From positions 310,001-374,000 of the IMG/VR virus record IMGVR_UViG_3300034072_000926: a stretch of 64,000 nucleotides of DNA; one strand, written 5' to 3'. The translations under genes and the position numbers were made by a program. Under the pieces are notes generated by a model. That model ran no database searches. It had not been told where the DNA came from and saw only the letters and a program-made list of their open reading frames with translations. Positions 1,240 through 15,189 of this stretch are shown in pieces. Every line of letters starts with the position of its first letter. The first letter of the stretch is position 1.

Positions 1240-2475
1240 GTGAGATCGACTTTGGACCTTTTGAACCTTATATGGCGTGATCTTCATAACGCCCGTATCT
1301 GGAAAGATGCTCCGGTTCTCGCCCGAGATATCTATAAGGATCATTACGCTAACTATCGGCGCATCTTCCATCGTGCTCGTCCTTTTAACCTCGATTCTAA
1401 GGCGCTTCGGGTCGCCATCGAATTGTCGATGGAAGGCCCGGAGAAGATGGCGGATCGTCTCCTTCTTGCACGACTACCCTTTCCCGAAATGTGGATCGAA
1501 TTTGATCTACACGACAAGCTATTCATCGGCAACGAACTAGGCATCAGTCCCGGTCCGGCCGAAGACACCCCAAGTCGTATTGGCTACCTCTTGCAGGAAG
1601 ATCCTGGTGATCATCTTCGCTGGACTGCAACCACATGGGTGAGTGTAGATAGCATCCGTCAACCGGTCCATAAAGCGCATCGTGATGAAATGCTCACAAG
1701 TGTGGCCATGAATGCGTGGATGATCGACACTGAGAAGCGAGCAATCCCTGAACGAATTGGCGCGATCAATGGTGTAACTCGCCAAGAGATCGAGAGCGCA
1801 ATCAGTCTCAATATCAAGAACGGCGACTATACCAAGGATGATGCTTGGAGGGCTTTTGCTCATCTGGGATGGGGTTATGGCTCCACAATGGATGATGTTA
1901 AGGAAGCCTATGATGGTATTGATCCTATGCGCGTTTTGGGACAGGTCCCTCTGCTTCAGAACTCGATCAACGTCGGATGGGAGCCACTGAGCTATCAGAT
2001 TCGTCCTATCTCAACCGGACGTATCAACGAGCAGTTCGCTAATTCGTGTGTGGAAAGCCGTGGTGATATGCGGACACTGGTTTCCATCCTCGCTCTCATC
2101 AATGAAGTGCCAATTATCGAGACTCCTGTGGAACGCAAAGGCAGTTTCATCGGGGCAGGTGGCGTGATCAAGAAATACCTGACCAACAAAACCGTCACGA
2201 TCAACATTCCAAGCCGCAAGCCCTTGAAGCAAATTCAGAGATTGCTGGCAAAGAAAGTGAAAAGCCACAAGGCTCGACATGAGGTTCGCGGTCACTGGCG
2301 CACGATTATTCACAAGAATGATCACTGGCGTAAGGACAATATGCCAGATGGAACGATCGTCAGGACTTTCATTGCGGCTGGGCAATTGGAGCGAGTCTGG
2401 GTTGAAAGCCACGAACGCGGGGATGCTTCTTATGGCTACGTGAAGCACGATTACAAGATTGAGAAGCGTAAATGA
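1240..2475 (+). CDS. Phage hypothetical protein with C-terminal HxVRGHWR motif
   Basis: 411-aa ORF with its own promoter; KARHEVRGHWRT resembles a motif recurrent in uncharacterised phage proteins. Confidence 0.75.
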   Translation: MRSTLDLLNLIWRDLHNARIWKDAPVLARDIYKDHYANYRRIFHRARPFNLDSKALRVAIELSMEGPEKMADRLLLARLPFPEMWIEFDLHDKLFIGNELGISPGPAEDTPSRIGYLLQEDPGDHLRWTATTWVSVDSIRQPVHKAHRDEMLTSVAMNAWMIDTEKRAIPERIGAINGVTRQEIESAISLNIKNGDYTKDDAWRAFAHLGWGYGSTMDDVKEAYDGIDPMRVLGQVPLLQNSINVGWEPLSYQIRPISTGRINEQFANSCVESRGDMRTLVSILALINEVPIIETPVERKGSFIGAGGVIKKYLTNKTVTINIPSRKPLKQIQRLLAKKVKSHKARHEVRGHWRTIIHKNDHWRKDNMPDGTIVRTFIAAGQLERVWVESHERGDASYGYVKHDYKIEKRK

Positions 2476-2675
2476 GCCTTCCAACTTTCTCAAAGATTTG
2501 GCCTCATGTCGTCAGGGTTCAGACTGAATTGAAGGACGATGCTTGGCTGTGGATCCAGCAATATTGCTGGGATAGTGATATTCCAGGCTATGACATCTTC
2601 ACCTCATTCAGCAATACTGAATTTGGCTTCAAAGACCCCAAACTAGCAATGGAATTCAAGCTCAGGTTTGGCTAA
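2472..2675 (+). CDS. FKLxW-motif array protein
   Basis: Ends FKDPKLAMEFKLRFG; ATGA overlap. Confidence 0.8.
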   Translation: MSLPTFSKIWPHVVRVQTELKDDAWLWIQQYCWDSDIPGYDIFTSFSNTEFGFKDPKLAMEFKLRFG

Positions 2676-2678
2676 ATA
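2673..2678 (+). promoter_or_regulatory. T4-like late promoter motif TAAATA
   Basis: Overlaps upstream TAA stop; followed by AGGAGG and ATG 2697. Confidence 0.5.
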
Positions 2679-2696
2679 CCTCTAGGAGGTATTCAT

Positions 2697-2969
2697 ATGT
2701 CCAAACAATTGAATCTCAAGAAGCAGCTAATCGACCAGGGTTCTCACGCTGGTGCAGCGATGGTTGCGCTTTCCCCACTTATTGCAAGTCCTTCGGTGTT
2801 TACCGCAGCAATTGCTGGCTTTGGTCTAGGCTTGGTTCGCGAAGTCACATCGCGAGGAACTCCTACCAAGTTGAGCAATTTTGTTGATACATTTAAGTCT
2901 CCATGGTCTTGCCTGGATATGTCTTTCTGGACACTAGGCGCTGTTTTGGCCTGGAGCATCTTCAACTAA
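2697..2969 (+). CDS. Small hydrophobic membrane protein (possible holin-like)
   Basis: Hydrophobic Gly/Ala-rich segments; late motif and strong RBS; lacks the array motif. Confidence 0.6.
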   Translation: MSKQLNLKKQLIDQGSHAGAAMVALSPLIASPSVFTAAIAGFGLGLVREVTSRGTPTKLSNFVDTFKSPWSCLDMSFWTLGAVLAWSIFN

Positions 2970-2970
2970 C

Positions 2971-3285
2971 GTGGATCGTCACGTTAGGCACTTAGAACCA
3001 TATTATCTGCAAAAGCAGAGTCTGCTTTTGCAATATCCACTTGTTTTGACTTTAGAGCAAGTGGATAGCATTACAGCCATATCCAATTGGATTGCCGGCG
3101 TTCACATTGATTGTAGGTGGCACGCCTTCCTCTTCAGGAACTTCGGCTTCGAAATTGGATATGACTTCTTCTTTCGTCAGCCTGGAGATGCCTCCCTATT
3201 CAAACTCGCTTGGGGAGGAATCATAGACGATAACATGCCTCCTATCCGTTCTGGATTCTTCCTCGGAGAGCAATGGACTCCTTGA
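2971..3285 (+). CDS. FKLxW-motif array protein
   Basis: FFRQPGDASLFKLAWGG. Confidence 0.75.
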   Translation: MDRHVRHLEPYYLQKQSLLLQYPLVLTLEQVDSITAISNWIAGVHIDCRWHAFLFRNFGFEIGYDFFFRQPGDASLFKLAWGGIIDDNMPPIRSGFFLGEQWTP

Positions 3286-3309
3286 CAAAAGGTTACTTTC
3301 TGCTACATT
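3282..3309 (+). promoter_or_regulatory. Sigma70-type promoter, probably leaderless transcript
   Basis: TTGAC(contains upstream TGA stop)-N17-TACATT, ATG 6 nt later. Confidence 0.65.
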
Positions 3310-3315
3310 GCGGTT

Positions 3316-3585
3316 ATGAAACCGATCGAGTCAAAATATAGAAAATTTCCTTTTGCCTTGGTATTACCCGACCTTATGCCTGTAGGACATGAGTCTCGTC
3401 ACATCGCAATCAAGGAATGGACCGATGCTCTCGATCTGGCTTTCAACACCCATTACGTCTGCTTTGAAGTTCAGAAGAGAGTTCAGTATCGGATAATCTC
3501 TCTCCACTGTTGGGCTTTTAGCGAAAAATGGATGTCACTCCAATTTAAGTTGAAGTTCGGTGGATGGTCGGATACAAATTCATAA
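3316..3585 (+). CDS. FKLxW-motif array protein
   Basis: FSEKWMSLQFKLKFGG. Confidence 0.75.
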   Translation: MKPIESKYRKFPFALVLPDLMPVGHESRHIAIKEWTDALDLAFNTHYVCFEVQKRVQYRIISLHCWAFSEKWMSLQFKLKFGGWSDTNS

Positions 3586-4055
3586 TTGATGGTCGCCCTC
3601 ATGCGACTTTCAACTGGTTCGATGGCGAAGTCAAGATGCAAAGCGCCCTACAGGACTGGTTGAATAGACATCGTTGCTGGGATGGAGCAGATCGAGGCTG
3701 GATGGGATGGACTGATCCATTGCAACTCCGTCCTCTCTGTAACTATAGCCAGATCGATAATACCTGGTTGGTTTTTGATTGGAATCATATCCATATCGGA
3801 AAAGCCTTTCGTGAGCGTTTCTCAAAATGGCGGGAAAGCATGGCTCATGAAGTTCGCTCTCATATTCCCTCTACGAGAACCGGCGAGCAAATTCTCGATC
3901 ATCATAGCAACTGGCTTCTTGCATTGTGTCAAATCGAAGGCCATGACTGGTCCAGGGCCCCATGTGAAAAATCATTTACGGATGATGACAATTGGGTGTA
4001 TAGCTTTGCTTCGAAGAAAGTCGCAGCGGCTTTCAAGATTGTCTTTGGAGTCTAG
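3564..4055 (+). CDS. FKLxW-motif array protein (probably two tandem domains)
   Basis: Internal FDWNHIHIGKAFRERF and terminal FASKKVAAAFKIVFGV. Confidence 0.75.
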   Translation: MVGYKFIIDGRPHATFNWFDGEVKMQSALQDWLNRHRCWDGADRGWMGWTDPLQLRPLCNYSQIDNTWLVFDWNHIHIGKAFRERFSKWRESMAHEVRSHIPSTRTGEQILDHHSNWLLALCQIEGHDWSRAPCEKSFTDDDNWVYSFASKKVAAAFKIVFGV

Positions 4056-4349
4056 ATGTTCAAGTCCCTGAAAGGCTTTGCCGATGATACTAAGCTTGGA
4101 ATGGGACTCCACGTGGATCTATTGCCTGCTGAATATCTCGCAATTGCCAAACGTGAGGATATAGGTCAGACTCCTTTTGCCGATACCCCTGCTTTGATTC
4201 GCGACCATCTGAAAAATTGGTGCGCAGATAATTCTCGCGGTCGATGGAAGTATTCTGACATCAACGTCGATAATCATTTGGCATTCCGCTTTGTCTTCCA
4301 GAAGAAGAGCGAAGCTGTTCGCTTCAAGCTCATATGGGGTGGCAAATGA
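4056..4349 (+). CDS. FKLxW-motif array protein
   Basis: FQKKSEAVRFKLIWGGK. Confidence 0.8.
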   Translation: MFKSLKGFADDTKLGMGLHVDLLPAEYLAIAKREDIGQTPFADTPALIRDHLKNWCADNSRGRWKYSDINVDNHLAFRFVFQKKSEAVRFKLIWGGK

Positions 4350-4546
4350 TCTTCCCTTATATGGTTAGAGTTCCTGATGAACGTGATCCCCGCAATGGTC
4401 ATGATACCATCGAATGGCTAAAAGAGCGCGGTAAGAATCCCGGTAAACATTATGACTTCCATATGCACGGCGGTCAATCGGGATATACGAGCTTCTGGTT
4501 TAAGAGCCGAACGATTGCTCGCTGGGTCGCGTTAGTCTGGACCTGA
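4346..4546 (+). CDS. FKLxW-motif array protein (divergent)
   Basis: FKSRTIARWVALVWT; ATGA overlap start 4346. Confidence 0.7.
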   Translation: MIFPYMVRVPDERDPRNGHDTIEWLKERGKNPGKHYDFHMHGGQSGYTSFWFKSRTIARWVALVWT

Positions 4547-4606
4547 TTTCTATTTTGCAAATTCTACCCTAACTCTGTTAATCCTTTTGGGTTAACGGAG
4601 GTCCTA

Positions 4607-4795
4607 GTGTTTGATCATTCAGTGTTTGTTACTAGCAATTCTCACAATATCAAACTCTTGAAGCAAATGAATTTGAAATTGGGTCGAGATTTCCGTTCCG
4701 AAAAAGGAGCGGTAGCTGCTGGTCGTCCCAATCAATTGCGTCTGCTATTCAAAGACAAAGATCAGGCAATGATCTTCAAGCTAAAGAGCAAATGA
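4607..4795 (+). CDS. FKLxW-motif array protein
   Basis: FKDKDQAMIFKLKSK; GGAGG RBS. Confidence 0.75.
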   Translation: MFDHSVFVTSNSHNIKLLKQMNLKLGRDFRSEKGAVAAGRPNQLRLLFKDKDQAMIFKLKSK

Positions 4796-5037
4796 CCCAT
4801 TACGTTTGGTTTGAAATGCCTGATGGGGTATTTGGTCCCAAGACCCTAGTTGTCAGGGGAGACATAGATGAATGGATTCTTATAAATGATCCACTCAACA
4901 CTATACAATTCAACTTCTTCTCAAAAGATAAGAGAACGCCAGTATTCTATACTAAGGATCTGTCAGACCTTAAATTCATGCGGTTCAAATTCGATTGCCT
5001 GAAAATGGCTCGTAGATTTGCCATAACATTTGTCTGA
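4792..5037 (+). CDS. FKLxW-motif array protein
   Basis: FDCLKMARRFAITFV; ATGA overlap. Confidence 0.7.
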   Translation: MTHYVWFEMPDGVFGPKTLVVRGDIDEWILINDPLNTIQFNFFSKDKRTPVFYTKDLSDLKFMRFKFDCLKMARRFAITFV

Positions 5038-5048
5038 TAAATTAACGT

Positions 5049-5279
5049 ATGGAAGAGATTTTCGTACGCACTCGCAAGCTCAGTATGACACAGCTTCTTG
5101 AAGTGTCTGCATGGTTGAAAGAACACCTAACTGGTTCGGCATCTATCCGACATGCTGATCCTACGATCTATATTCAGCAATATTGCGCTGAAATGGATTC
5201 AGGCAAAAGGATCCATAGGATCAAGGTCCGATTTTTCAACGAGACTGACGCTAGACGCTTCTTAATGGTTTGGGGTTGA
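5049..5279 (+). CDS. FKLxW-motif array protein
   Basis: FFNETDARRFLMVWG. Confidence 0.75.
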   Translation: MEEIFVRTRKLSMTQLLEVSAWLKEHLTGSASIRHADPTIYIQQYCAEMDSGKRIHRIKVRFFNETDARRFLMVWG

Positions 5280-5303
5280 CAAATCACCACTTTATGCTAG
5301 ACA
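5276..5303 (+). promoter_or_regulatory. Sigma70-type promoter
   Basis: TTGAC(contains upstream TGA stop)-N17-TAGACA. Confidence 0.6.
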
Positions 5304-5322
5304 GTAGCATAAGGAGGTGCAA

Positions 5323-5571
5323 ATGAATCAACTGCCAGATATTGAAGACCTGTTTCCCAACCTCGTTCGCGTCAAGCATAACGGGGATGCGTCCGGTGTT
5401 GCACTGAAGATTATGAAGTGGCTTGAAGGCCGTTCCATCATGATCCACAAGGACTTCTATCTGGATATGCAGACTGATTCAGAACGCATCGAGGTCCGCT
5501 TCCGCAAAAAGAAGCCCGCCAAGCTGTTCAAGGAAAACAAGAAAGCAATCCGCGATGAAGTCGAAGGTTGA
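5323..5571 (+). CDS. FKLxW-motif array protein (divergent)
   Basis: EVRFRKKKPAKLFKENK; AAGGAGG RBS supports ATG 5323. Confidence 0.7.
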   Translation: MNQLPDIEDLFPNLVRVKHNGDASGVALKIMKWLEGRSIMIHKDFYLDMQTDSERIEVRFRKKKPAKLFKENKKAIRDEVEG

Positions 5572-5851
5572 TCCTCTCGTCGAGCATGGTTTCAAGATTT
5601 TCATTCCCTACTCGAATACCCGTGCGTTCGAGACTCGTAAACTCACGCACACTGGTGGCAAATACAGCGATCGGAAATATTCCTATGAGCGGGATAATGT
5701 GCCTTCCAAAGAGCTGTCGGCTTGGCTGAAGGAACAGTGCGGGACTCATGGTGTTCTGTGGCTTTGTAAGAAGACCAGTGAGGGCTTCAACATATACTTC
5801 GCGCGCAAAGATGTTGCTATGTTTGCCAAGCTCACGTGGGGCGGGGTGTGA
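5555..5851 (+). CDS. FKLxW-motif array protein
   Basis: FARKDVAMFAKLTWGGV. Confidence 0.75.
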   Translation: MKSKVDPLVEHGFKIFIPYSNTRAFETRKLTHTGGKYSDRKYSYERDNVPSKELSAWLKEQCGTHGVLWLCKKTSEGFNIYFARKDVAMFAKLTWGGV

Positions 5852-6132
5852 CTCATATCTGCATAAAGGCAACCGACGACATCTATGACGGTTTCGGATT
5901 GCGCCTAGAGATCCACGACTGGCTGACAGAAAATGTCGGCTGGGCGGCAAGCGATATGACTGATTATACTTGGGGTAAGAAAGTCGGATATTATGTGCGC
6001 CCATCTGAGAGCGCACTTAATCCGATGTATCAGTCCTCAGGGGATAGACAAACCGGTGGAAATTATCTACACTTCTTGTTCAAAGATCCCGCAAAAGCAA
6101 TGTTGTTCAAACTTAGATGGGGTGGTAAATGA
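5848..6132 (+). CDS. FKLxW-motif array protein
   Basis: FKDPAKAMLFKLRWGGK; GTGA overlap. Confidence 0.8.
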   Translation: MTHICIKATDDIYDGFGLRLEIHDWLTENVGWAASDMTDYTWGKKVGYYVRPSESALNPMYQSSGDRQTGGNYLHFLFKDPAKAMLFKLRWGGK

Positions 6133-6383
6133 CCAATAAGGAAAAGGCCCTCGCCGCTCTGCTCTATGTAAGCCTGATCAAATGGGCCGAGTCGACCATT
6201 GATGTCCTGGAGCGAGTTCGTGCAACTGGCGTCCATGACGATATGATCGATGATCTGATCCACAACGTCAATGACCTCATTGATAAGAAGCTGGCCGAGC
6301 ATCATGACTCTGATGATGTCATGGACGAGATCGAAAAGGTCAATGCCCATATAGTGAAGATGAAAGCTGTCTATGGCGTTTGA
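6129..6383 (+). CDS. Hypothetical helical protein
   Basis: 84 aa, ATGA overlap, acidic/helical; lacks the array motif. Confidence 0.65.
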   Translation: MTNKEKALAALLYVSLIKWAESTIDVLERVRATGVHDDMIDDLIHNVNDLIDKKLAEHHDSDDVMDEIEKVNAHIVKMKAVYGV

Positions 6384-6714
6384 GTGTATCTGGAATGATG
6401 ATGGCACGGTGACTATCCTTGAGGCATTCTCGGATAATCGCTATGCGGGTTCTCCACCTCAAACTGAGGACGAACGTCATGCAGCTCGTGAGAAGAGAAA
6501 TCGTCAAACTGGCTTCGAGAACCTTCGTGACCTCATGAAGGAAATGCAAGACAAGAAGTGGCAAGCATCTCCTCTCTATCACTGGTTCGAAGACCACTGC
6601 CCTGGCTATAAAGTCTTCCTCTCGCATCCCGCAAACTCGATGCCAAAGGAAGCAGCAAAGATCACATTCGCTGATCCTAAACATGCGATGCATTTCAAGC
6701 TAGTCTGGGCGTGA
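6373..6714 (+). CDS. FKLxW-motif array protein
   Basis: FADPKHAMHFKLVWA. Confidence 0.8.
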   Translation: MAFECIWNDDGTVTILEAFSDNRYAGSPPQTEDERHAAREKRNRQTGFENLRDLMKEMQDKKWQASPLYHWFEDHCPGYKVFLSHPANSMPKEAAKITFADPKHAMHFKLVWA

Positions 6715-6974
6715 TCAAGATCACCAATAATGATTATATCGTAATTGTCGATCGCAGTCTTGCGATTATTCAAACCCCTAGTGCAACCTGTCTTAACAAT
6801 GACATGCTCGATTGGCTAACAGTAAACATTGGTCAGCAATCTATGATGGCATTATCTACATCAAACGATGCTGCATGGTTTATGCGGATATGGGATTTTG
6901 CTGGTGATATGAAACAGGGCTTTTTCTTTAAGACGAGGAAGCATGCCTTGTTATTTGCTGCGCGGTGGCTATGA
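6711..6974 (+). CDS. FKLxW-motif array protein
   Basis: FKTRKHALLFAARWL; GTGA overlap. Confidence 0.75.
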   Translation: MIKITNNDYIVIVDRSLAIIQTPSATCLNNDMLDWLTVNIGQQSMMALSTSNDAAWFMRIWDFAGDMKQGFFFKTRKHALLFAARWL

Positions 6975-7195
6975 CTGAGATCATGGTCCAGTTCGATATA
7001 GTGGCTACGAACAATCTCTGGCGAACTCCTAAGATCCTCCTGAATCCTGATGTCAAGGAATTCCTTGATCGCTATAGAGCAACCTTTGAATACCTACTTG
7101 CCGGAGTCTATACGCCACATACCGAGCAATGGCAAGTTCTCTTCACATTCAGAAACAGAGCAGATGCAATCGCATTCAAATTGACATTCTGCTAA
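6971..7195 (+). CDS. FKLxW-motif array protein
   Basis: FRNRADAIAFKLTFC; ATGA overlap. Confidence 0.8.
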   Translation: MTEIMVQFDIVATNNLWRTPKILLNPDVKEFLDRYRATFEYLLAGVYTPHTEQWQVLFTFRNRADAIAFKLTFC

Positions 7196-7210
7196 CCTAT
7201 CCCACATAAC

Positions 7211-8028: not shown

Positions 8029-8104
8029 GGGTGTCTGCGGTGCTAACAGGACTTATAGACGCTCATAGGGAGCCGTAGGGCATCTGAGGGTATAGGAAAG
8101 AGTT

Positions 8105-8353: not shown

Positions 8354-8359
8354 GCTGAT

Positions 8360-9144: not shown

Positions 9145-9148
9145 GGAG

Positions 9149-9609: not shown

Positions 9610-9851
9610 AGACCGTTCGCATCTCTTATAACTATGAACCGCCTGAACATGACGATTTATTCGTCAGGGCACATCTTGTTGAACAAGCAGACAAGAAGAT
9701 CAGGATCATTACGAGGACGTTCGAGACGTTCACGGAAATGAAGCTAGACCCCGATAGTTACGAGGTCAGACTCGGGGACGAGTGTTTGGAGATTACCTTC
9801 ACCAAGCTCTCTGATGCACTCTTGTTCAAGCTCACGTTTCGATCTGTGTAA
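9606..9851 (+). CDS. FKLxW-motif array protein (last of plus arm)
   Basis: FTKLSDALLFKLTFRSV; ATGA overlap. Confidence 0.8.
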   Translation: MKTVRISYNYEPPEHDDLFVRAHLVEQADKKIRIITRTFETFTEMKLDPDSYEVRLGDECLEITFTKLSDALLFKLTFRSV

Positions 9852-10133
9852 CATCCAATATCGAGATTCATATTGGGCAACGAGTTCTTCTCGTTCAAGC
9901 GTGTCGAAGGCACGAATCAAGAGATCATGAAAGCAAGCCTTGAAATGAAGGGCGTATCGTCTTGGTAAGACGACGGTGTAGAACTCCTGCCCCTTACGCT
10001 CCGATTGGCTGACATGATAATCCCAACCTTGCTCCAAGCCATACATGTCAAAAATCTTCTTAATCACGACATGAAAGGTTACCCCGCGTTTCGTGAAGTT
10101 CAGGAATGATTCGTTGACTTCTATGCCGATCAA
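9744..10133 (-). CDS. FKLxW-motif array protein (divergent, extended; last of minus arm)
   Basis: YALHFKACF followed by a tail overlapping the convergent gene; TTGA overlap start. Confidence 0.6.
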   Translation of the reverse strand: MIGIEVNESFLNFTKRGVTFHVVIKKIFDMYGLEQGWDYHVSQSERKGQEFYTVVLPRRYALHFKACFHDLLIRAFDTLEREELVAQYESRYWMLHRSKRELEQECIRELGEGNLQTLVPESDLVTIGV

Positions 10134-10432
10134 TTGCCACCCCACAAGGTCTTGAAATAGACGGCGTGCTTTGGATCTCTGAACCAGAGCGTTAATGGAT
10201 ATTCATCCTCTTTGAGCATTTTGTCAAAGTCAATGGCCCAACCCCATGGATCTCCACTCTCGATGAAATCCTCATGGGTATTGTCAGACGACCACCAACG
10301 ACATTCATCATCCTCGGGCAATATGCCAGCGATCTTGATAAGATGTTCTCGAGCGTCTGGACGAAGCTCTATGACTGAACCCCAGATTGCCACCTTACCG
10401 GGTCGGAGTGAGAAACTATAGATCATCACCAT
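10130..10432 (-). CDS. FKLxW-motif array protein
   Basis: FRDPKHAVYFKTLWGGN. Confidence 0.8.
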   Translation of the reverse strand: MVMIYSFSLRPGKVAIWGSVIELRPDAREHLIKIAGILPEDDECRWWSSDNTHEDFIESGDPWGWAIDFDKMLKEDEYPLTLWFRDPKHAVYFKTLWGGN

Positions 10433-10803
10433 GTCAATTTGAAATGAACTGCCTCCATCTTGTTCAGGAAACCAACGAACCAGCCAAGCTCGTCATTCTG
10501 TTGATCACGATAGAACGCATACTGGTAGCCGTTTGCTGTAATCCAGTCGTGGATTGGACGAATCAGGCGATAGTTCAATCCACCCGCTTTGAAGGTAACA
10601 TAGTCCTTTTCTACTACCTGTGATAATCCATCTTTGATCCAAGGAACCATTTCGATATTCAGAGGTTCAGGTGGCATACTGCTACGTCGAATAAGACTGA
10701 TATGGTCGTCAAAATTGGCAACTTTTACCCAATAGATCACAGGGAAACGACAGCCGATCCCGTCTTTTGTCTTATAGGTAATTGGAGCCGTGATATCTTT
10801 CAT
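10426..10803 (-). CDS. FKLxW-motif array protein
   Basis: FLNKMEAVHFKLTW; start moved to ATG 10803, 7 nt after a -10 box. Confidence 0.75.
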   Translation of the reverse strand: MKDITAPITYKTKDGIGCRFPVIYWVKVANFDDHISLIRRSSMPPEPLNIEMVPWIKDGLSQVVEKDYVTFKAGGLNYRLIRPIHDWITANGYQYAFYRDQQNDELGWFVGFLNKMEAVHFKLTW

Positions 10804-10809
10804 ACCACA

Positions 10810-10837
10810 TTCATACGACCTTTTACCCAAATGTCAA
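10810..10837 (-). promoter_or_regulatory. Sigma70-type promoter built on an orphan KLT codon run
   Basis: TTGAC-N17-TATGAA. Confidence 0.55.
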
Positions 10838-10855
10838 CTTGAATAGCATCCCATT

Positions 10856-11101
10856 CTAGAGCCATGCTAGGACAAACCGCATAGAATCAATCCTGTTATG
10901 GATCCTAAGAAAGGTGTATTGACCACATCGTTCACTTAATTGGTATTGGACGCCATTTTCCTCAAACCAATGTTGTAGAGGCGGAGACAATAATATCTCA
11001 TCTGGACCGAAGGCATTGAAGGGATGATTTCTAGGCCGTCTCATAAGTTCTGGGGCACCAAAGCCCCAGATGGGCAATTTTACACTAACACCTAGAGCCA
11101 T
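10856..11101 (-). CDS. FKLxW-motif array protein
   Basis: IHNRIDSMRFVLAWL. Confidence 0.75.
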   Translation of the reverse strand: MALGVSVKLPIWGFGAPELMRRPRNHPFNAFGPDEILLSPPLQHWFEENGVQYQLSERCGQYTFLRIHNRIDSMRFVLAWL

Positions 11102-11373
11102 GATAGTTTGAACAACATAGCGGCATTTGCATCATCCTTATGGAATGCAATACCTGGAACAATACTGTAGCGATTAGGACGATAGTCCAAAATCTCGACG
11201 AAACTAGGTTCAGGTTCGAAGTTGCTCATTCGCAATTGGTTTTGATCGAACCATTCGACTCCCTCTGCGGAAATCCACATAGGCTGGGATGGATCCCAAA
11301 ACGCATGACCCCATGGCAGAGGTATGAAATATGTCTGCATACGTTCTATATAGTAGATTCGGTAGTCAGCCAT
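11092..11373 (-). CDS. FKLxW-motif array protein
   Basis: DANAAMLFKLSWL. Confidence 0.8.
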   Translation of the reverse strand: MADYRIYYIERMQTYFIPLPWGHAFWDPSQPMWISAEGVEWFDQNQLRMSNFEPEPSFVEILDYRPNRYSIVPGIAFHKDDANAAMLFKLSWL

Positions 11374-11680
11374 ATTTCAACTTCAAGAGAGTGGCTTCTG
11401 AATGATCCGAGAAGAAGAAAGCCAATCCACTTACCCTACTAGGTTTGCCATCGCCCCATACCCAATCATAGTAGGGTTCAATGCGAATCAGACTCTTGTA
11501 GGCTATGATCTCTTTGGAGAACTCATCATTGGGCCATACCTCACCAATATGTCGTCCACCTGTTATAATAGATTCGAATCCCATTCTCGATTTCTGGACG
11601 ATTTGCTTTGGCCGAAGATAGAGGTGTTCAAAGACCTCGCTACTTCGAGGTATCTTGACTTCGTATTCCATCACTTCCAC
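11366..11680 (-). CDS. FKLxW-motif array protein
   Basis: FSDHSEATLLKLKYG. Confidence 0.75.
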   Translation of the reverse strand: MEVMEYEVKIPRSSEVFEHLYLRPKQIVQKSRMGFESIITGGRHIGEVWPNDEFSKEIIAYKSLIRIEPYYDWVWGDGKPSRVSGLAFFFSDHSEATLLKLKYG

Positions 11681-12033
11681 GCGAGCTTGAACCGGAGAGC
11701 ATCATCCATGTCAGTGAAGCGGAACTGAACACCTAGGGCACGATAGGGTTTCAGTTCTTCCGGATTCTCTAGAGTGAGATTACCAGGAATGAAAGCCTTC
11801 TCATCGCGATACTTGGGCCAGAGAAAATCGAAGCCATATTTGCCACGACAGTTATCAACTAGCCAAGAGGCCATCTCTGGGGAGATTGCCCAGAGCGCTT
11901 CGCCCCTAATACGGAAGAGAATACTTTCTGCACCTTTACCAGCATCCCGACGAGTAAAGGGACCATCCTTGAATTCAAGGTTCACTCGAATCAAGCTAGG
12001 CGCAACCTCTTCCTTTTTCTTTCGCCACCACAT
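11671..12033 (-). CDS. FKLxW-motif array protein
   Basis: FTDMDDALRFKLAWK; AAGAGG RBS. Confidence 0.8.
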   Translation of the reverse strand: MWWRKKKEEVAPSLIRVNLEFKDGPFTRRDAGKGAESILFRIRGEALWAISPEMASWLVDNCRGKYGFDFLWPKYRDEKAFIPGNLTLENPEELKPYRALGVQFRFTDMDDALRFKLAWK

Positions 12034-12057
12034 ATTTGACCTCTTTTGTTACAAAAA

Positions 12058-12085
12058 TCATAACGCGGTTAACTCACAAGGTCAA
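12058..12085 (-). promoter_or_regulatory. Sigma70-type promoter
   Basis: TTGAC(contains upstream TGA stop)-N17-TTATGA. Confidence 0.55.
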
Positions 12086-12363
12086 GAATTACCGCCCCAA
12101 GTGAGCTTGAAAAGAACTGCGACCTTAGGATTCTTGATAGAAATCCTAACGATGCGCTTTGTCATGTATGTTCGAGGGATGCCCTCAACGAATGTGTCCA
12201 CATAATAGTCACGACCTAGCTTCAATTCATGGTCTTTCAACCATGAACCAACAAACTTCTCCGCAAGAGCACGTCGCTCATTTGCGGTCAATTTGTCATA
12301 CATCTGATTCATGCCATGGTCGAAGTCTCGATAAGCAACAACATCTGGTCGAACTTCTCTCAT
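12082..12363 (-). CDS. FKLxW-motif array protein
   Basis: IKNPKVAVLFKLTWGGNS; ATGA overlap. Confidence 0.8.
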   Translation of the reverse strand: MREVRPDVVAYRDFDHGMNQMYDKLTANERRALAEKFVGSWLKDHELKLGRDYYVDTFVEGIPRTYMTKRIVRISIKNPKVAVLFKLTWGGNS

Positions 12364-12587
12364 GCCCACCTCATCTTAAACAACATCGCGGACTTTCGAT
12401 CTAGGAAACGAAACGATATCTCCCACTCATCGACCGTCCGATTCAAAGTGCAGAAAGAGCGACTACAGGAGATGTTTGAATCACGCAACCAGGAAAAGAT
12501 CTCCTTCCTGACTTGGATACCGCGATTGCCTTTGTTGTCTTCCCACCAGCATCCAGCTTTAGAGAAAGGTATCATGATCTCAATCAT
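12360..12587 (-). CDS. FKLxW-motif array protein
   Basis: FLDRKSAMLFKMRWA; ATGA overlap. Confidence 0.8.
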   Translation of the reverse strand: MIEIMIPFSKAGCWWEDNKGNRGIQVRKEIFSWLRDSNISCSRSFCTLNRTVDEWEISFRFLDRKSAMLFKMRWA

Positions 12588-12877
12588 TCGCCGCCCCACG
12601 TGAGTTTGAACAACATAGCCTTATCCAAGTCCTCGATATCAACAGAGAACTTCTGAGTTTGTGGACTGTCATCCCACAGATACAAAAATCGATACTGGAT
12701 ATCATGGTCCGTCATCCATTGATGAACTTCGTCATTCAAGCCTACGATTGCGTTGATACTGTTCCATTCCTTAGACACCGGCTTGCCATTAAAGATCTGC
12801 GGGCCTCTAGGTAGAACAGGTTGATCACTGTTGAGAACAGTGAACTCGCAGATGGTATAACTGACATCGAAGATCAT
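12584..12877 (-). CDS. FKLxW-motif array protein
   Basis: IEDLDKAMLFKLTWGGE. Confidence 0.8.
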   Translation of the reverse strand: MIFDVSYTICEFTVLNSDQPVLPRGPQIFNGKPVSKEWNSINAIVGLNDEVHQWMTDHDIQYRFLYLWDDSPQTQKFSVDIEDLDKAMLFKLTWGGE

Positions 12878-13125
12878 ACGCCACCCCAGACAAGCTTGAA
12901 CATCATAGCTTCCTCTTTGGTCAAGAAAGCAACCCGAGAATGTTTGAAAGGCATGTTATCGTCTGACATTATGATCTGAGGCCCAGCAAACTGAAAACGA
13001 GCATGATCATCACCAAGCTTCTGACAGTTCTCTTTGATCCACTGCGATACCTCAGTCTTGATTGGAGATGTCGTGGTCCTTGGATATTCGCAAATGTTAC
13101 GATATGGAACTTCAACCCAGATCAT
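12874..13125 (-). CDS. FKLxW-motif array protein
   Basis: FLTKEEAMMFKLVWGGV. Confidence 0.8.
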   Translation of the reverse strand: MIWVEVPYRNICEYPRTTTSPIKTEVSQWIKENCQKLGDDHARFQFAGPQIIMSDDNMPFKHSRVAFLTKEEAMMFKLVWGGV

Positions 13126-13150
13126 TGTCCACCCCAGACAAGCTTGAACA
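12881..13150. repeat. Perfect 22-bp direct repeat at the 3' ends of two adjacent array genes
   Basis: ccaccccagacaagcttgaaca at 12881-12902 and 13129-13150. Confidence 0.9.
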
Positions 13151-13352
13151 ATAGAGCGACTTTGGGATCAGAGAGCGTCACGACACAATCTCGTCCATTA
13201 GTATGGAAATCATGATCCCATCCACTAGGAGTGGCATGGACATCGAGCCACTGATAGAGCGCACTGTTGAACACCTCAACATTTCCCCAAGGGGATTCGT
13301 TGCAGCGTTCTAGCCGATAAGCCAAACTAGCAGGGATAACCACATTGGACAT
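13122..13352 (-). CDS. FKLxW-motif array protein
   Basis: LSDPKVALLFKLVWGGQ. Confidence 0.8.
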   Translation of the reverse strand: MSNVVIPASLAYRLERCNESPWGNVEVFNSALYQWLDVHATPSGWDHDFHTNGRDCVVTLSDPKVALLFKLVWGGQ

Positions 13353-13361
13353 CTGGTTTGC

Positions 13362-13601
13362 TTAACACCACTTTATCTTAAAGTAAATGGCTTCCTTGCG
13401 AGCCGTAGAAGGAAATTCCACATAGAAGGAACCATAGACTTGACCACGCGGGAGAAGCTTTACCTTGTGGAGACCTCGACTCTTGAGCCACTCGGTGATT
13501 TCAGGAATGAAGACATACCCTTCATCTAGAAAGATGGAATGCTTCCTAAAGCTGAACATGCCAACGTCGTATGAATTAACATCAATCCTATACATCACCA
13601 C
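13362..13601 (-). CDS. FKLxW-motif array protein
   Basis: KEAIYFKIKWC. Confidence 0.75.
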   Translation of the reverse strand: MVMYRIDVNSYDVGMFSFRKHSIFLDEGYVFIPEITEWLKSRGLHKVKLLPRGQVYGSFYVEFPSTARKEAIYFKIKWC

Positions 13602-13974
13602 ACCATAAAAGTTTGAAGATCAAAGCGTCATTCTTGTTCGTGAAGGCAATCTCACGAGTAGAGGTTGCACGACGTAGAACTTCTTGGTCAATATTGGGCT
13701 GATTGTTCGTTTTGGCGACCCGAACTTCTCTGAATAGATTCTTTGTCTCTGTGCTCATGAAGATATCCTCCATGGCATGTTTGCGATTGATGACTTCATA
13801 CCATCGTCCAACACAATTAGAGTCTAACCATTCCATAAGCGACTCGGATAAAGGAAAACCGTAGACGTGTGGACGATCATTACTAGCATGCCAACGAAGC
13901 ACAATCTTTGGAAGCATTGGAGTACGATCAAATGCCTTCCGTATCCATCGGAGATCCACAAAGAACATTTCCAT
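13588..13974 (-). CDS. FKLxW-motif array protein
   Basis: FTNKNDALIFKLLWC; TAATG overlap start 13974. Confidence 0.75.
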   Translation of the reverse strand: MEMFFVDLRWIRKAFDRTPMLPKIVLRWHASNDRPHVYGFPLSESLMEWLDSNCVGRWYEVINRKHAMEDIFMSTETKNLFREVRVAKTNNQPNIDQEVLRRATSTREIAFTNKNDALIFKLLWCGDV

Positions 13975-14222
13975 TAGTGTATCCAAGCAAGAACGAAATG
14001 AATGAGACGAATCCGAGTCTTGAAACTGACATAACACCCGCCAGAGAACGGCTCATAGGAGATCAATCCCTTGAAATCATCTAACCACTCATAAGCATAG
14101 ATGGAGACCTGTTTGTCATTAAGCCAGATTCCATATGGTCGTCGGTTGATCTTATGGTCAGCCTCTATGCGACTCTTCCGCCTTACCTGCTCACGCTTGA
14201 TACCCTCTAACAAAGACGTCAT
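13974..14222 (-). CDS. FKLxW-motif array protein
   Basis: FKTRIRLIHFVLAWIH; ATGA overlap. Confidence 0.7.
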   Translation of the reverse strand: MTSLLEGIKREQVRRKSRIEADHKINRRPYGIWLNDKQVSIYAYEWLDDFKGLISYEPFSGGCYVSFKTRIRLIHFVLAWIH

Positions 14223-14500
14223 TTCCACCTCAATGCAAACTTGATCGCATCAACCCGATTCTCGAACGTATATCGAAATGCAACCAATTCACTCTTAACT
14301 GAAACCATCTGACGCCCAGATGGATGAGAACCAGCAGGAGTCTTGATTATGTTCTGATCAATACCACGAACAAAATCATAGATGTCCTCTTCCTCAAACC
14401 AATCCTGAAACATAGATATGATTGTTCGCATATCTCCACGACCTACAACAGCACGTCGTATAGTAGGCGTATCAAGGACAACAGTGTAGGTCATCACCAA
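14219..14500 (-). CDS. FKLxW-motif array protein
   Basis: FENRVDAIKFALRWK. Confidence 0.8.
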   Translation of the reverse strand: MVMTYTVVLDTPTIRRAVVGRGDMRTIISMFQDWFEEEDIYDFVRGIDQNIIKTPAGSHPSGRQMVSVKSELVAFRYTFENRVDAIKFALRWK

Positions 14501-14736
14501 TTCAACCTGAATAGTAGGGCATCCTCACGATCATCAAAACAGAATCGAACACCCATATTGATAAAACGAGCACATTTCCTATCAAAGATGGTCCAACTAT
14601 GAACAGAGTAGGCCGCCCGACTATGGTCCACTAACCATATCTCAACCTCTTTCCTCAAATGAGGAATAGGAACACCGTGGAGGACGAGTTCCTCCATGAC
14701 AGACGTATTGGTCCAGGGGATCTTAACCTCTATCAT
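14494..14736 (-). CDS. FKLxW-motif array protein
   Basis: FDDREDALLFRLNW; start moved to ATG 14736 (MIEVKIPW, like the MIEIMIPF paralogue). Confidence 0.8.
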   Translation of the reverse strand: MIEVKIPWTNTSVMEELVLHGVPIPHLRKEVEIWLVDHSRAAYSVHSWTIFDRKCARFINMGVRFCFDDREDALLFRLNW

Positions 14737-14980
14737 ACGTCCCCCACAAAAGCTTGAACAACATTGCGTGATTCCGATCCTCAAAATGAAAGGTGGTCGA
14801 TTCACGACGAACCCGCCCATAAGCATTCTGCTTATGGCAATCAGTAACCTCATATGGAAACTGACTTTCCGCTAACCATTCCCGAAGGTCAGTCCACCAC
14901 TCTCTATAGCGCATCATATACTCAGCACGACCACCAAAAGGATAAGGATTCATGACTACAACCTGGTAACTCATAACCAC
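14723..14980 (-). CDS. FKLxW-motif array protein
   Basis: FEDRNHAMLFKLLWG. Confidence 0.8.
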   Translation of the reverse strand: MVMSYQVVVMNPYPFGGRAEYMMRYREWWTDLREWLAESQFPYEVTDCHKQNAYGRVRRESTTFHFEDRNHAMLFKLLWGTYDRG

Positions 14981-15186
14981 TCCAGAGTGAACATCATTGC
15001 TTGACCACGAGACTCGAAAACAAAGAACAACACATCCTCATTTGCAGACGTCCCACTCTCCCACTTGAACACAATCCCACGGTCGAGCAACCAATCCTTT
15101 ATCGAACCCGTTCGCGCCGGACAACCCATCCGACGCGCATAAGCAGCTAAGGCTTCCATAGGTCTGACTAAGGCAACTCTATACAT
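14971..15186 (-). CDS. FKLxW-motif array protein (first of minus arm)
   Basis: FESRGQAMMFTLEWL; start uncertain (ATG 15186 or GTG 15222). Confidence 0.7.
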   Translation of the reverse strand: MYRVALVRPMEALAAYARRMGCPARTGSIKDWLLDRGIVFKWESGTSANEDVLFFVFESRGQAMMFTLEWL

Positions 15187-15189
15187 CTC

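What the first reader, a model, noticed from the sequence alone, without database searches (positions are those of the whole stretch)
2472..15186. Convergent double array of ~41 hypervariable small paralogues united by a C-terminal FxDxxxAxxFKLxW motif
Seen: 22 plus-strand genes (2472-9851) and 19 minus-strand genes (9744-15186) face each other. Most encode 60-160 aa, are translationally coupled (ATGA/GTGA/TAATG overlaps) and look unrelated except for a mid-protein Trp and a terminal strand-helix motif (e.g. FKDPAKAMLFKLRWGG, FTDMDDALRFKLAWK, FEDRNHAMLFKLLWG). Synonymous codon variation in the motif indicates protein-level selection. Established: F-x-F/[DE]-x3-A resembles the RNP1-strand/helix-2 pattern of RRM/ferredoxin-like folds. 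Inference: one small scaffold has been expanded about 48-fold in this window into a diversified repertoire, perhaps RNA-binding regulators, anti-defence binders or subunits of a polymer joined through the conserved C-terminus. I know of no described function for such an array.
Basis: partly seen in the sequence, partly recalled or inferred. Interest (0 to 1): 0.85.

Follow-up and report, generated by a model that had tools for sequence, protein, structure and literature searches.

The report
Huge-phage array of small paralogous proteins
A 465-kb bacteriophage genome carries two facing rows of about 41 tiny, very different genes that all encode the same small, undescribed protein domain; the family is real, old and kept by selection, but its job is unknown, and my best guess is a set of host-binding or counter-defence proteins.

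Summary
Window 2472-9851 (+) holds 22 members and 9744-15222 (-) holds 19 members of one small protein family. Another 4-7 members lie at 29258-31238 and 35645-35914. A profile built only from unrelated metagenome proteins finds 39 of the 41 array genes and nothing else outside those loci.

The window is identical to part of a 465,259-bp IMG/VR phage contig. The same convergent array occurs in five other 180-460 kb phage contigs. A cultured phage, Sinorhizobium phage Phosso, also has members.

The family has 761 representative clusters in public data, all unnamed. It has no Pfam, PHROGs, NCBIfam, PADLOC or PDB match. A confident AlphaFold model (pLDDT 89.6) gives beta3-alpha-beta2-alpha, and no solved structure matches it.

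The paralogues are ancient: none scores above 32 bits against another. Orthologues in related phages reach 83% identity, and pN/pS is 0.17. "Hypervariable" therefore means old divergence plus cassette turnover, not active diversification. RRM-like RNA binding is not supported.

The + arm is led by an AcrVA2/FinQ-like gene. Best guess (0.4): early cytoplasmic binders for host takeover or counter-defence. This is a new family within a known kind, the paralogue arrays of jumbo phages.

The parts
1194..1221 (+). near-consensus sigma-70-type promoter-like site (TTGACA-16-TATAGT, 11 of 12) just upstream of the gene that leads the + arm
   Evidence: best of 30 sites; 26 expected by chance, so one site is only suggestive; sequence
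1240..2475 (+). 411-aa AcrVA2/FinQ-like gene that leads the + arm; its stop overlaps the first member's start (ATGA)
   Evidence: ESM Atlas: first hits are AcrVA2-family clusters, score 0.97, 217-221 shared features. hhalign of its family profile against the Planktothrix phage Pag-Yong1 ORF annotated 'anti-CRISPR protein AcrVA2': probability 99.6%, E 1.3e-23, 310 columns, shared RHEVRGH and HERGDA motifs. No hit in the local Pfam, NCBIfam or PHROGs copies. Orthologues of 61-77% identity sit at the same position in L014 and L005.
2472..8689 (+). + arm, first part: 19 family members at 2472-2675, 2971-3285, 3316-3585, 3564-4055, 4056-4349, 4334-4546, 4607-4795, 4792-5037, 5049-5279, 5317-5571, 5555-5851, 5836-6132, 6373-6714, 6711-6974, 6965-7195, 7211-7639, 7636-8028, 8105-8329, 8360-8689
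   Evidence: Collinear one-to-one orthologues in L014, 33-83% identity.
2697..2969 (+). non-member inside the + arm: 90-aa protein with two hydrophobic stretches (possible membrane protein)
   Evidence: translation; no family HMM hit; no Pfam or NCBIfam hit; 80% identical orthologue in L014
6129..6383 (+). non-member inside the + arm: 84-aa acidic protein that looks helical from its sequence
   Evidence: no family HMM hit; 65% identical orthologue in L014
8669..9109 (-). Peptidase_M15_3 endolysin embedded on the opposite strand within the + arm
   Evidence: phrog_894 endolysin, E 3.7e-36; PF08291 on the identical gene; present at the same place in L005, L011, L012 and L014 at 79-85% identity
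9149..9851 (+). + arm, last part: 3 members at 9149-9385, 9382-9609, 9606-9851
   Evidence: 9149-9385 has orthologues in five relatives (48-83%), the other two have none
9744..15222 (-). - arm: 19 members at 9744-10145, 10130-10432, 10426-10830, 10856-11101, 11092-11373, 11366-11680, 11671-12033, 12082-12369, 12360-12599, 12584-12877, 12874-13125, 13122-13352, 13362-13601, 13588-14037, 13974-14228, 14219-14500, 14494-14739 (longest ORF runs to 14853), 14723-14980, 14971-15222
   Evidence: Few orthologues in relatives beyond 9744-10830 and 13122-13352. Strain L003 has one allele replaced (11366-11680) and one extra member inserted at about 14491-14499.
15223..15751 (-). 529-bp non-coding leader ahead of the - arm, with clustered CTATAGT/ACTATAG (palindromic ACTATAGT) motifs
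   Evidence: 13 CTATAGT in the window against 3.6 expected; 7 of them lie within 15221-15942. The same clustering occurs in the equivalent leaders of L014, L011 and L012. Sequence.
29258..31238 (-). third, smaller cluster of the family: solid members 29258-29893 (211 aa), 29902-30141, 30715-30987, 30984-31226; marginal 30138-30443 and 30482-30718
   Evidence: A1 profile and external profile hits
35645..35914 (-). isolated, weak member (ends ...FTDRKAAIQIQIRYSS)
   Evidence: A1 profile E 1.5e-5, but the sequence was in the training set; not hit by the external profile

Best explanation
What is shown. The region is an ancient lineage-specific expansion of one small, undescribed alpha/beta domain. 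The core is about 60-70 residues, ordered beta-beta-beta-alpha-beta-beta-alpha. It belongs to a clade of 180-470 kb phages.

The conserved residues are mostly hydrophobic: the Trp-Leu of helix 1, an aromatic in strand 4, F-x-F in the last strand, and A-x-x-F-K-L-x-W in the last helix. By their spacing they look like the packing core. Loops, termini, charge and length vary freely.

The genes form two convergent, operon-like arms with overlapping stops and starts. Each paralogue is kept by purifying selection. Whole genes are gained, lost and swapped as start-to-stop cassettes.

What is inferred. The products are soluble cytoplasmic proteins. They are probably made early, from a host-type promoter on the + arm and from a separate regulated leader on the - arm. 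Each uses its own variable surface to bind a different target.

Together they would form a battery of host-takeover or counter-defence binders. The battery resembles an anti-defence island or a poly-immunity locus built from a single scaffold. The + arm is co-transcribed with an AcrVA2/FinQ-like conflict gene.
For: Family, extent and selection:
- The family is real and specific.
- Public data hold 761 representative clusters at E<1e-3, nearly all 60-130 aa. ESM Atlas neighbours are 100% viral.
- At least 53 members lie in six loci of the same 465-kb genome, in the parts I could see. The ++++---- main array is conserved in five other huge contigs.
- pN/pS is 0.17 against strain L003, with no stop codons.
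- Orthologues reach 83% identity, while the best paralogue pair scores at most 32 bits.

Turnover:
- The - arm has few orthologues in relatives.
- One allele is swapped between otherwise identical strains.
- One 88-aa member is inserted exactly from ATGA to ATGA.
- This pattern is typical of accessory conflict loci (inference).

Scaffold plus variable surface:
- Confident model, pLDDT 89.6.
- Column conservation is confined to hydrophobic positions and a few acidic or Lys positions.
- pI runs from 4.1 to 10.5 and GRAVY is negative for 38 of 41 members (at most +0.16 for the other three).

Context:
- An AcrVA2-like gene is translationally coupled to the first member. AcrVA2 homologues are reported on megaphages and in inter-element conflict (bioRxiv 10.1101/2022.11.29.518452).
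- A sigma-70-like promoter lies upstream.
- A conserved motif-rich leader precedes the - arm.
Against: - No member has any detectable similarity to a known anti-defence, immunity or host-takeover protein.
- Early expression rests on one consensus promoter match, in a scan that finds about as many sites as chance does.
- The - arm lies directly downstream of, and co-directional with, the tail-fibre genes, and an endolysin sits inside the array. This could equally mean late expression.
- The one-to-one conservation of + arm members over large distances is more like housekeeping phage functions than arms-race genes.
- The AcrVA2-like neighbour is adjacent in only 4 of 6 relatives examined. It is not adjacent in Phosso or in Caulobacter phage CcrSC.
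- No binding partner has been shown.
Confidence: 0.4

Rival explanations
1. Virion-associated or assembly role. The small proteins are late products: decoration or adaptor subunits, or dedicated chaperones, for the many fibre and Ig-like proteins encoded next door. Different members would serve different fibres.
For: The - arm lies immediately downstream of, and co-directional with, the tail-fibre genes at 16249-23590. These carry tail fiber PHROGs and PTR/He_PIG domains. An endolysin, usually late, is embedded in the array in nearly all relatives. + arm members are conserved one-to-one like structural genes. The third cluster (29258-31238) abuts five tandem genes of about 385 aa, two of which I scanned and found to be He_PIG proteins.
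Against: In Phosso the members sit among replication and nucleotide-metabolism genes (MazG, DnaE-like, GroES, PhoH), not structural genes. In the 35.7-kb contig L016 and the Novosphingobium contig L021 the members (one and two respectively) are not inside structural modules. Other clusters in the same genome lie far from the fibre genes. A 529-bp leader with terminator-like hairpins separates the - arm from the fibre operon. No PHROG structural family matches.
Confidence: 0.15
2. Nucleic-acid-binding regulators on an RRM or ferredoxin-like scaffold. Each member would bind a different RNA or DNA to control phage or host expression.
For: The last five elements (beta-alpha-beta-beta-alpha) have the order of the first five elements of a ferredoxin-like/RRM fold. 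F-x-F sits on the strand that corresponds to RNP1. The weak top Foldseek hits include KH domains, RRMs and ribosomal proteins. Phage G's roughly 35-copy zinc-ribbon expansion was proposed to be transcription factors (PMC7824862).
Against: No Foldseek hit is significant: best E 0.7, TM at most 0.45; PTB RRM2 E 1.5, TM 0.39. pI spans 4.1-10.5, and 12 of 41 members are below 6. The conserved aromatics alternate with variable residues and are most simply read as core residues; no conserved basic patch is seen. There is no Pfam RRM, KH or ACT signal even at E=1 across 132 members.
Confidence: 0.12
3. Accessory subunits of the AcrVA2/FinQ-like protein. The small proteins would act as interchangeable adaptors or specificity factors (or regulators) for the 411-aa protein that leads the + arm, widening the set of host targets it silences.
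For: There is an ATGA overlap between the AcrVA2-like gene and the first member. The same adjacency is seen in L014, L012 and L005. AcrVA2 recognises a target polypeptide, and its homologues diverge in the N-terminal part (bioRxiv 10.1101/2022.11.29.518452).
Against: Adjacency is absent in L011, L018, Phosso and CcrSC. CcrSC has the AcrVA2-like gene but no family member within 20 kb on either side. Most members lie in other loci. No interaction has been tested.
Confidence: 0.08
4. Largely neutral genome filler. A small, robust fold was duplicated to fill an enlarged capsid (the ratchet idea of Hua et al. 2017), with little individual function.
For: Tandem duplication has been proposed as a route to jumbo genome size (PMC5646251). 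Adjacent members are slightly more alike than random pairs, p=0.002. Members come and go between strains.
Against: pN/pS is 0.17 and all 41 reading frames are intact. Individual orthologues are conserved at up to 83% identity across phages whose conserved flanking genes are 77-82% identical. There are no recent duplicates at all. C-terminal extensions are conserved between orthologues.
Confidence: 0.07

Closest known systems
[quoted passage not shown]
   Same: Dozens of small paralogous genes in tandem in a very large phage genome, of unknown function. They are read as products of tandem duplication (PMC5646251; PMC7824862; review PMC13282480).
   Different: Those arrays are described as 'very similar' genes or as a zinc ribbon. 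Here the paralogues are so diverged that none scores above 32 bits against another. The domain is a different, undescribed alpha/beta fold. The array is a convergent pair of arms conserved across a clade, and at least 53 copies lie in six loci.
Poly-immunity loci of polymorphic toxin systems (tandem arrays of SUKH/Imm-type immunity genes); comparison from my own knowledge of that literature
   Same: Rows of small, diverged, soluble paralogues on a common scaffold, each thought to neutralise a different partner. Turnover is cassette-like.
   Different: No homology. The only SUKH_5, SUKH_6 and Imm51 hits are single members at E 0.0065-0.044 among 132 scanned, which is chance level. No toxin genes are adjacent. 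The carrier is a lytic-type huge phage, not a bacterial chromosome.
Phage anti-defence islands / acr loci, including AcrVA2/FinQ family genes
   Same: Small genes of unknown function clustered with a recognised conflict gene. Content varies between related elements.
   Different: Known islands hold unrelated small proteins, not one expanded family. No member matches a known Acr or anti-defence protein. No Aca-type regulator was seen.
Multigene families of large eukaryotic DNA viruses (ASFV MGF110/360/505; poxvirus ankyrin and BTB families); comparison from my own knowledge
   Same: Tens of diverged paralogues in arrays. Some members are conserved and others variable between strains. They are linked to host range and immune evasion.
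   Different: Unrelated folds and hosts. Those arrays lie near genome termini, whereas this one lies at 312-325 kb of a 465-kb contig beside tail-fibre genes.
RRM / ferredoxin-like (beta-alpha-beta-beta-alpha-beta) and KH domains
   Same: Two-layer alpha/beta arrangement. The strand-helix pair at the C-terminus has aromatic residues on the strand.
   Different: Three strands precede helix 1 and there is no strand after helix 2. Foldseek E is at least 0.7 and TM at most 0.45. There are no RNP1/RNP2 signatures or Pfam hits.

Membership tests
RRM (RNA recognition motif) | beta1-alpha1-beta2-beta3-alpha2-beta4 topology, detectable by structure comparison | tested here: not met
   The model (pLDDT 89.6) has strands 2-7, 12-16, 24-28; helix 30-39; strands 45-49, 55-60; helix 63-73. 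Best RRM hit is PTB RRM2: E 1.5, TM 0.39, 59 columns.
RRM (RNA recognition motif) | RNP1 and RNP2 sequence signatures / Pfam RRM_1 match | tested here: not met
   No RRM family among Pfam hits for 43 window members at E<=0.1, or among the 25 most-matched of 45 families listed for 132 family members at E<=1.
RRM (RNA recognition motif) | binds RNA on the exposed sheet face | not testable with these tools
   Only indirect evidence: pI 4.1-10.5 and no conserved basic positions.
Any curated protein family (Pfam-A, PHROGs v4, NCBIfam 20, PADLOC 2.0) | significant profile match | tested here: not met
   No recurrent hit; only scattered single hits at chance level.
Any solved structure (PDB) | sequence-profile or fold match | tested here: not met
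   Profile against PDB sequences: best E 0.6. Foldseek against PDB with two models: none at E<=0.001, best TM 0.45. BFVD: only uncharacterised phage proteins, TM 0.5-0.8, E at least 0.037.
Jumbo-phage tandem paralogue array (lineage-specific expansion) | many paralogues of one family, adjacent, in a phage genome over 200 kb | tested here: met
   41 members in 12.7 kb. The window is 100% identical to part of a 465,259-bp IMG/VR contig.
Jumbo-phage tandem paralogue array (lineage-specific expansion) | origin by tandem duplication | tested here: inconclusive
   Adjacent members are slightly more alike than random pairs (14.1 against 9.6 bits, permutation p=0.002). No recent duplicates exist, and most best paralogues are not neighbours.
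Diversity-generating (DGR-type) hypervariable locus | near-identical template and variable DNA repeats | tested here: not met
   The only repeats in 1-16500 are 26-49 nt at 60-85% identity over the motif-coding part. The strain comparison shows pN/pS 0.17, not targeted hypermutation. I did not search for a reverse transcriptase gene.
AcrVA2/FinQ family (for the neighbouring 411-aa gene at 1240-2475, not for the small proteins) | homology over most of the length, including the conserved C-terminal His/Arg motif region | tested here: met
   hhalign 99.6%, E 1.3e-23, 310 columns against a phage ORF annotated AcrVA2, sharing RRHEVRGH and HERGDA. ESM Atlas 0.97 to AcrVA2-family clusters. Caveats: the reference ORF's name is only an annotation, and the local Pfam and NCBIfam copies give no hit.
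AcrVA2/FinQ family (for the neighbouring 411-aa gene) | inhibits Cas12a by triggering loss of its mRNA | not testable with these tools
   That activity was shown for Moraxella AcrVA2 (bioRxiv 10.1101/2022.11.29.518452). Most homologues occur without Cas12a, so the target here is unknown.

The most novel reading that the evidence does not exclude
The family is a new fold used as a general-purpose binder scaffold by huge phages. Dozens of members per genome would each neutralise a different host defence or takeover target. Some may act as specificity adaptors for the co-transcribed AcrVA2-like mRNA-silencing protein. That would make these arrays the largest single-scaffold counter-defence repertoire known in any phage, and a rich source of new inhibitors.
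Probability: 0.12. Interest if true: 0.85.

Novelty: new member of a known kind. Interest (0 to 1): 0.55.

Why it matters
Huge phages are full of genes with no known function. Here one undescribed domain alone accounts for at least 53 genes in a single 465-kb genome and for 761 representative clusters in public data.

Three things make the family worth attention:
- The fold has no solved relative.
- Individual paralogues have been kept for a long time.
- A cultured carrier exists (Sinorhizobium phage Phosso), so the question 'what are all these small genes for?' can be tested.

If the members are binders of host proteins, the family would be a large natural library of inhibitors. If they are structural or neutral, the array bears on how jumbo genomes grow.

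The precise ATGA-to-ATGA cassette insertion also shows how such arrays gain and lose whole genes.

Tried and rejected
- Nearest cultured phage. Megablast of 10 kb and tblastn of a 696-aa ORF against 50,697 phage records found nothing. tblastn with family members reached only Sinorhizobium phage Phosso.
- Curated families. Pfam, PHROGs, NCBIfam and PADLOC scans of members gave nothing usable. I rejected the single weak SUKH/Imm51 hits as chance: about 1.3 hits at E<=0.01 are expected from 132 queries.
- Structure. Foldseek of the first, poorer model (pLDDT 71.9) gave only KH and dimeric alpha-beta-barrel hits at E>1. The better model did no better against PDB.
- Sequence searches. PDB by sequence profile and ESM Atlas gave no named relative. 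A literature search for the motif string and for Phosso returned nothing.
- Related-locus scans. The search for related loci with the full alignment failed for lack of a conserved stretch, as did the genome-contig scan with A2. A degenerate DNA pattern replaced the latter and found one bacterial contig.
- Chance matches. About 28 of the first 80 IMG/VR stretches that matched the motif pattern held no HMM-supported member and are probably chance matches.
- Ubiquitin-like reading. I considered it because of the C-terminal Gly-Gly and rejected it. GG is present in only about half the members, is followed by 1-2 residues or long extensions, and the fold is not beta-grasp.
- DNA-level explanation. 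I considered a recombination site or a Shine-Dalgarno constraint as the reason for the motif and rejected it as the main cause, because synonymous sites vary freely. TGG-GGN-GGN may still help ribosome binding for the next gene (untested).
- AcrVA2 link. Confirmation through PDB, plasmids (FinQ) and NCBIfam failed. It succeeded only through hhalign to an annotated phage ORF.
- RNA features. tRNA and Rfam scans of the window were empty.

Full report
**1.

The ORF list for 1-17000 shows a row of small + strand ORFs from 2472 to 9851. It faces a row of small - strand ORFs from 9744 to 15222, and the two rows overlap by 108 bp at their 3' ends.

I count 22 family members on the + strand. Two small non-members lie among them (2697-2969, with two hydrophobic stretches; 6129-6383, acidic). 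An M15 endolysin sits on the opposite strand at 8669-9109 (phrog_894, E 3.7e-36). The - strand holds 19 members.

An alignment of 43 sequences has only about 9% mean column identity. It still keeps a helix motif, E-[VI]-x-x-W-L-x-E-N, and the terminal F-x-F-x-[DN]-x3-A-x-x-F-K-L-x-W-(G-G).

**2. It is more than chance**

I built an HMM from 120 metagenome proteins, each at most 45% identical to any window protein. I ran it against all 980 window ORFs of at least 35 aa in six frames.

- It hit 39 of the 41 array ORFs and four ORFs at 29258-31238.
- It hit nothing anywhere else.
- The two it missed (7636-8028 and 9744-10145) carry the motif internally, followed by long C-terminal extensions. The window-derived profile does find them.

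In the leave-one-out test, 27 of 41 scored E<1e-3 and 35 of 41 scored E<0.01.

At the motif, Ala uses four codons and Leu six. DNA repeats in 1-16500 are only 26-49 nt at 60-85% identity.

Junctions are tight:
- 12 of 22 overlap in the + arm and 15 of 18 in the - arm.
- Nine are exact 4-nt overlaps.
- Spacers are at most 76 nt (coordinates).

**3. Where the window comes from, and how wide the family is**

Window 3588-23974 is 100% identical to part of JGI/IMG-VR contig 3300034072_000926, which is 465,259 bp long. Window position x corresponds to contig position x + 310,000. The window also carries tail-fibre genes, Ig-like He_PIG proteins and a glutamyl-tRNA synthetase homologue. This is a huge phage.

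A profile search of 1.84 billion representative proteins gave 761 hits at E<1e-3. Nearly all are 60-130 aa; a few are two-domain fusions; none has a name. ESM Atlas neighbours are all 'hypothetical protein' and 100% viral.

In IMG/VR the family is multi-copy in contigs of 462, 436, 417, 277, 182, 182, 125, 119 and 104 kb. Five of these show the same ++++---- main array, with 35-39 stringent members each.

In the 465-kb genome I see at least 53 stringent members in six loci. That count covers only the parts I could fetch.

Other carriers:
- Sinorhizobium phage Phosso, a cultured 469-kb phage (PV764938), has at least eight members in one 24-kb stretch. All are annotated hypothetical.
- Across 185,579 species' genomes, the strict motif pattern matched only one contig, from Novosphingobium guangzhouense. 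It holds two HMM-supported members.
- A 35.7-kb viral contig has one member.

So the domain exists in single or double copy in ordinary elements and is massively expanded in a huge-phage clade.

**4. Fold**

With a 132-sequence alignment, AlphaFold2 models the 76-aa product of 13122-13352 at pLDDT 89.6 and pTM 0.73. The elements are strands 2-7, 12-16 and 24-28, helix 30-39, strands 45-49 and 55-60, and helix 63-73.

A 98-aa member (5836-6132), modelled with a shallower alignment (pLDDT 71.9), shows the same core order. Two members are thus consistent with one fold. I had no further prediction jobs.

Foldseek against PDB gives nothing at E<=0.001. The best is E 0.7 with TM at most 0.45, and RRM hits such as PTB RRM2 have E 1.5 and TM 0.39. 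Against BFVD, only uncharacterised phage proteins match, with TM 0.5-0.8 and E at least 0.037. They include proteins from Agrobacterium phage Atu_ph07 and Caulobacter phage CcrPW.

Pfam, PHROGs, NCBIfam, PADLOC and PDB sequences give no usable hit.

Column statistics show which positions are nearly invariant:
- W35, F60, A66, F69, K70, L71 and W73 in the 76-aa numbering.
- Hydrophobic 32, 36, 58, 67 and 68.
- An acidic stripe on helix 1 (31, 34, 38).
- An Asp/Asn cap at position 62.

The i, i+3, i+7 spacing of A, F and W in the helix, and the i, i+2 spacing of F-x-F in the strand, are what a buried core would show. That reading is inference, because I had no coordinates.

**5. Evolution: 'hypervariable' needs correcting**

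Within the window no two members score above 32 bits. Best full-length identities are about 28-37%.

Nearly every + arm gene from 2472 to 9385, including the two non-members and the endolysin, has a collinear orthologue in the 462-kb contig L014, at 33-83% identity. The exceptions are 4792-5037 (no hit) and 5836-6132 (only a 28% non-collinear hit). Partial collinearity is seen with L012, L018 and L005.

Flanking conserved genes are 77% identical (the 411-aa gene) and 82% identical (the endolysin). Most - arm genes between 10856 and 15222 have no orthologue, only paralogue-level hits.

So most of the expansion predates the split of these phages. One arm is stable and the other turns over.

Strain L003 is 97.7-99.3% identical at DNA level.
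- The - arm shows 64 synonymous and 42 non-synonymous differences, giving pN/pS 0.17, with no stop codons.
- Most of the differences fall in one gene, 11366-11680 (pS 0.68, 70% aa identity), between identical neighbours. That is an allele replacement.
- L003 also has one extra 88-aa member, inserted exactly between the stop-start overlap ...TGGTGATGA... and a second ...GGATGA.... Whole genes therefore move as start-to-stop cassettes.

Adjacent members are slightly more alike than random pairs (p=0.002), a faint trace of tandem duplication. There are no template/variable repeats of the DGR type.

**6. Context**

*The + arm.* It is led by a 411-aa gene (1240-2475) whose stop overlaps the first member's start.
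- ESM Atlas places this gene among AcrVA2-family clusters (score 0.97, 217-221 shared features).
- A profile of 37 homologues aligns to the Planktothrix phage Pag-Yong1 ORF annotated 'anti-CRISPR protein AcrVA2' with hhalign probability 99.6%, E 1.3e-23, over 310 columns. The two share the ARLPF...W-[IV]-E, RRHEVRGH and HERGDA motifs.
- The local Pfam and NCBIfam copies give no hit.

Marino et al. [quoted passage not shown] They also report that conserved C-terminal His/Arg residues are needed. They find homologues, including FinQ, on many mobile elements and megaphages, usually where no Cas12a is present.

A near-consensus sigma-70-type site (TTGACA-16-TATAGT) lies at 1194-1221. The scan as a whole is not enriched over shuffles, so this is only suggestive.

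*The - arm.* It follows a 529-bp leader (15223-15751) rich in CTATAGT/ACTATAG.
- The window has 13 copies against 3.6 expected.
- Seven of them lie in 15221-15942.
- The same clustering is seen in the equivalent leaders of L014, L011 and L012.

*Association with the AcrVA2-like gene.* It is adjacent to the array in L014, L012 and L005. It is not adjacent in L011, L018 or Phosso. Caulobacter phage CcrSC has the gene but no family member within 20 kb on either side. The link is therefore clade-specific.

**7. How it most likely works**

*Shown:* a real, old, selected expansion of one small soluble domain. The members have very different surfaces: pI 4.1-10.5, GRAVY negative for 38 of 41 (at most +0.16 otherwise), lengths 62-163 aa, and conserved member-specific extensions.

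*Inferred:* the conserved residues hold the fold, and the variable loops and termini carry member-specific binding. The two arms are co-transcribed, translationally coupled units.

Given the AcrVA2-like leader, the cassette turnover and the restriction to phages, the products are most likely cytoplasmic binders used for host takeover or counter-defence. I put this at 0.4.

Rivals:
- A late, virion or assembly role, suggested by the neighbouring fibre genes and the endolysin (0.15).
- Nucleic-acid-binding regulators (0.12). The charge spread and the absence of any RRM/KH signal count against this.
- Adaptors of the AcrVA2-like protein (0.08).
- Neutral filler (0.07). pN/pS and orthologue conservation count against this.

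The rest is unassigned.

**8. Comparison with what is known, and verdict**

Large tandem paralogue arrays in jumbo phages have been reported. [quoted passage not shown] Iyer et al. describe about 35 zinc-ribbon genes in phage G, which they call unprecedented (PMC7824862). A recent review mentions such arrays (PMC13282480).

This case is the same kind of thing, but it differs in four ways:
- The family and fold are new.
- The paralogues are extremely diverged.
- The convergent two-arm layout is conserved across a clade.
- The copy number is higher.

I file it as a new member of a known kind, with interest 0.55. Neither occurred in what I could run.

Noticed in passing
window 1240-2475 (+): A 411-aa gene that leads the + arm belongs to the AcrVA2/FinQ-like family (hhalign 99.6% to an ORF annotated AcrVA2; ESM Atlas 0.97). 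It has invariant RH-V-RGHWR and HERGD motifs. Homologues occur in Caulobacter Bertelyvirus phages and in Phosso.
   Followed up: yes
window 15221-15942, mainly the 15223-15751 intergenic leader: Seven copies of CTATAGT/ACTATAG (palindromic ACTATAGT) are clustered ahead of the - arm. The window has 13 against 3.6 expected. The same clustering occurs in the equivalent leaders of L014 (14 hits in 850 bp), L011 and L012. This could be a promoter or operator array.
   Followed up: partly
L003:1658-1924 against window about 14491-14499; window 11366-11680: A strain 97.7-99.3% identical at DNA level has one extra 88-aa family member, inserted exactly from ATGA to ATGA. One member is replaced by a 70%-identical allele between identical neighbours. 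This shows cassette-wise gene gain and replacement.
   Followed up: yes
window 23489-29146 (+): Five tandem genes of 324-392 aa. The two I scanned carry He_PIG Ig-like domains, so this looks like a second paralogue row next to the tail-fibre genes. Phosso has a similar row of about 315-395-aa genes (L009:3316-9978) near its family members.
   Followed up: partly
window 38432-39715 (-): A 427-aa protein matches phrog_35649 (E 8e-101). Its tblastn hits include a gene annotated glutamyl-tRNA synthetase (gltX) in Acinetobacter phage records. A phage-borne aminoacyl-tRNA synthetase is typical of huge phages.
   Followed up: partly
window 31239-32201 (-): A 320-aa protein with a TPM_phosphatase domain (PF04536, E 4e-29) lies next to the third small-family cluster.
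   Followed up: no
window 2697-2969 (+): A 90-aa non-member inside the + arm has two hydrophobic stretches. It is 80% conserved in L014. It could be a membrane protein, perhaps holin-like given the endolysin 5.7 kb downstream. This was not tested.
   Followed up: no
window 9744-9851: The last genes of the two arms overlap tail to tail by 108 bp. The - strand gene (9744-10145) carries a 61-aa extension after the family motif that covers the overlap. Its orthologue in L014 is 50% identical.
   Followed up: partly
L021 (Novosphingobium guangzhouense NZ_LYMM01000033.1, 56001-64000); L016 (IMGVR_UViG_641522612_000001): The family also occurs in low copy outside huge phages. Two members lie next to a helicase-like gene on a bacterial contig. 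One member lies upstream of a large terminase gene in a 35.7-kb viral contig.
   Followed up: partly
window 1-64000: No tRNA genes and no Rfam family at gathering threshold in the whole window. Most larger ORFs from 33 to 64 kb have no Pfam or PHROG match.
   Followed up: yes
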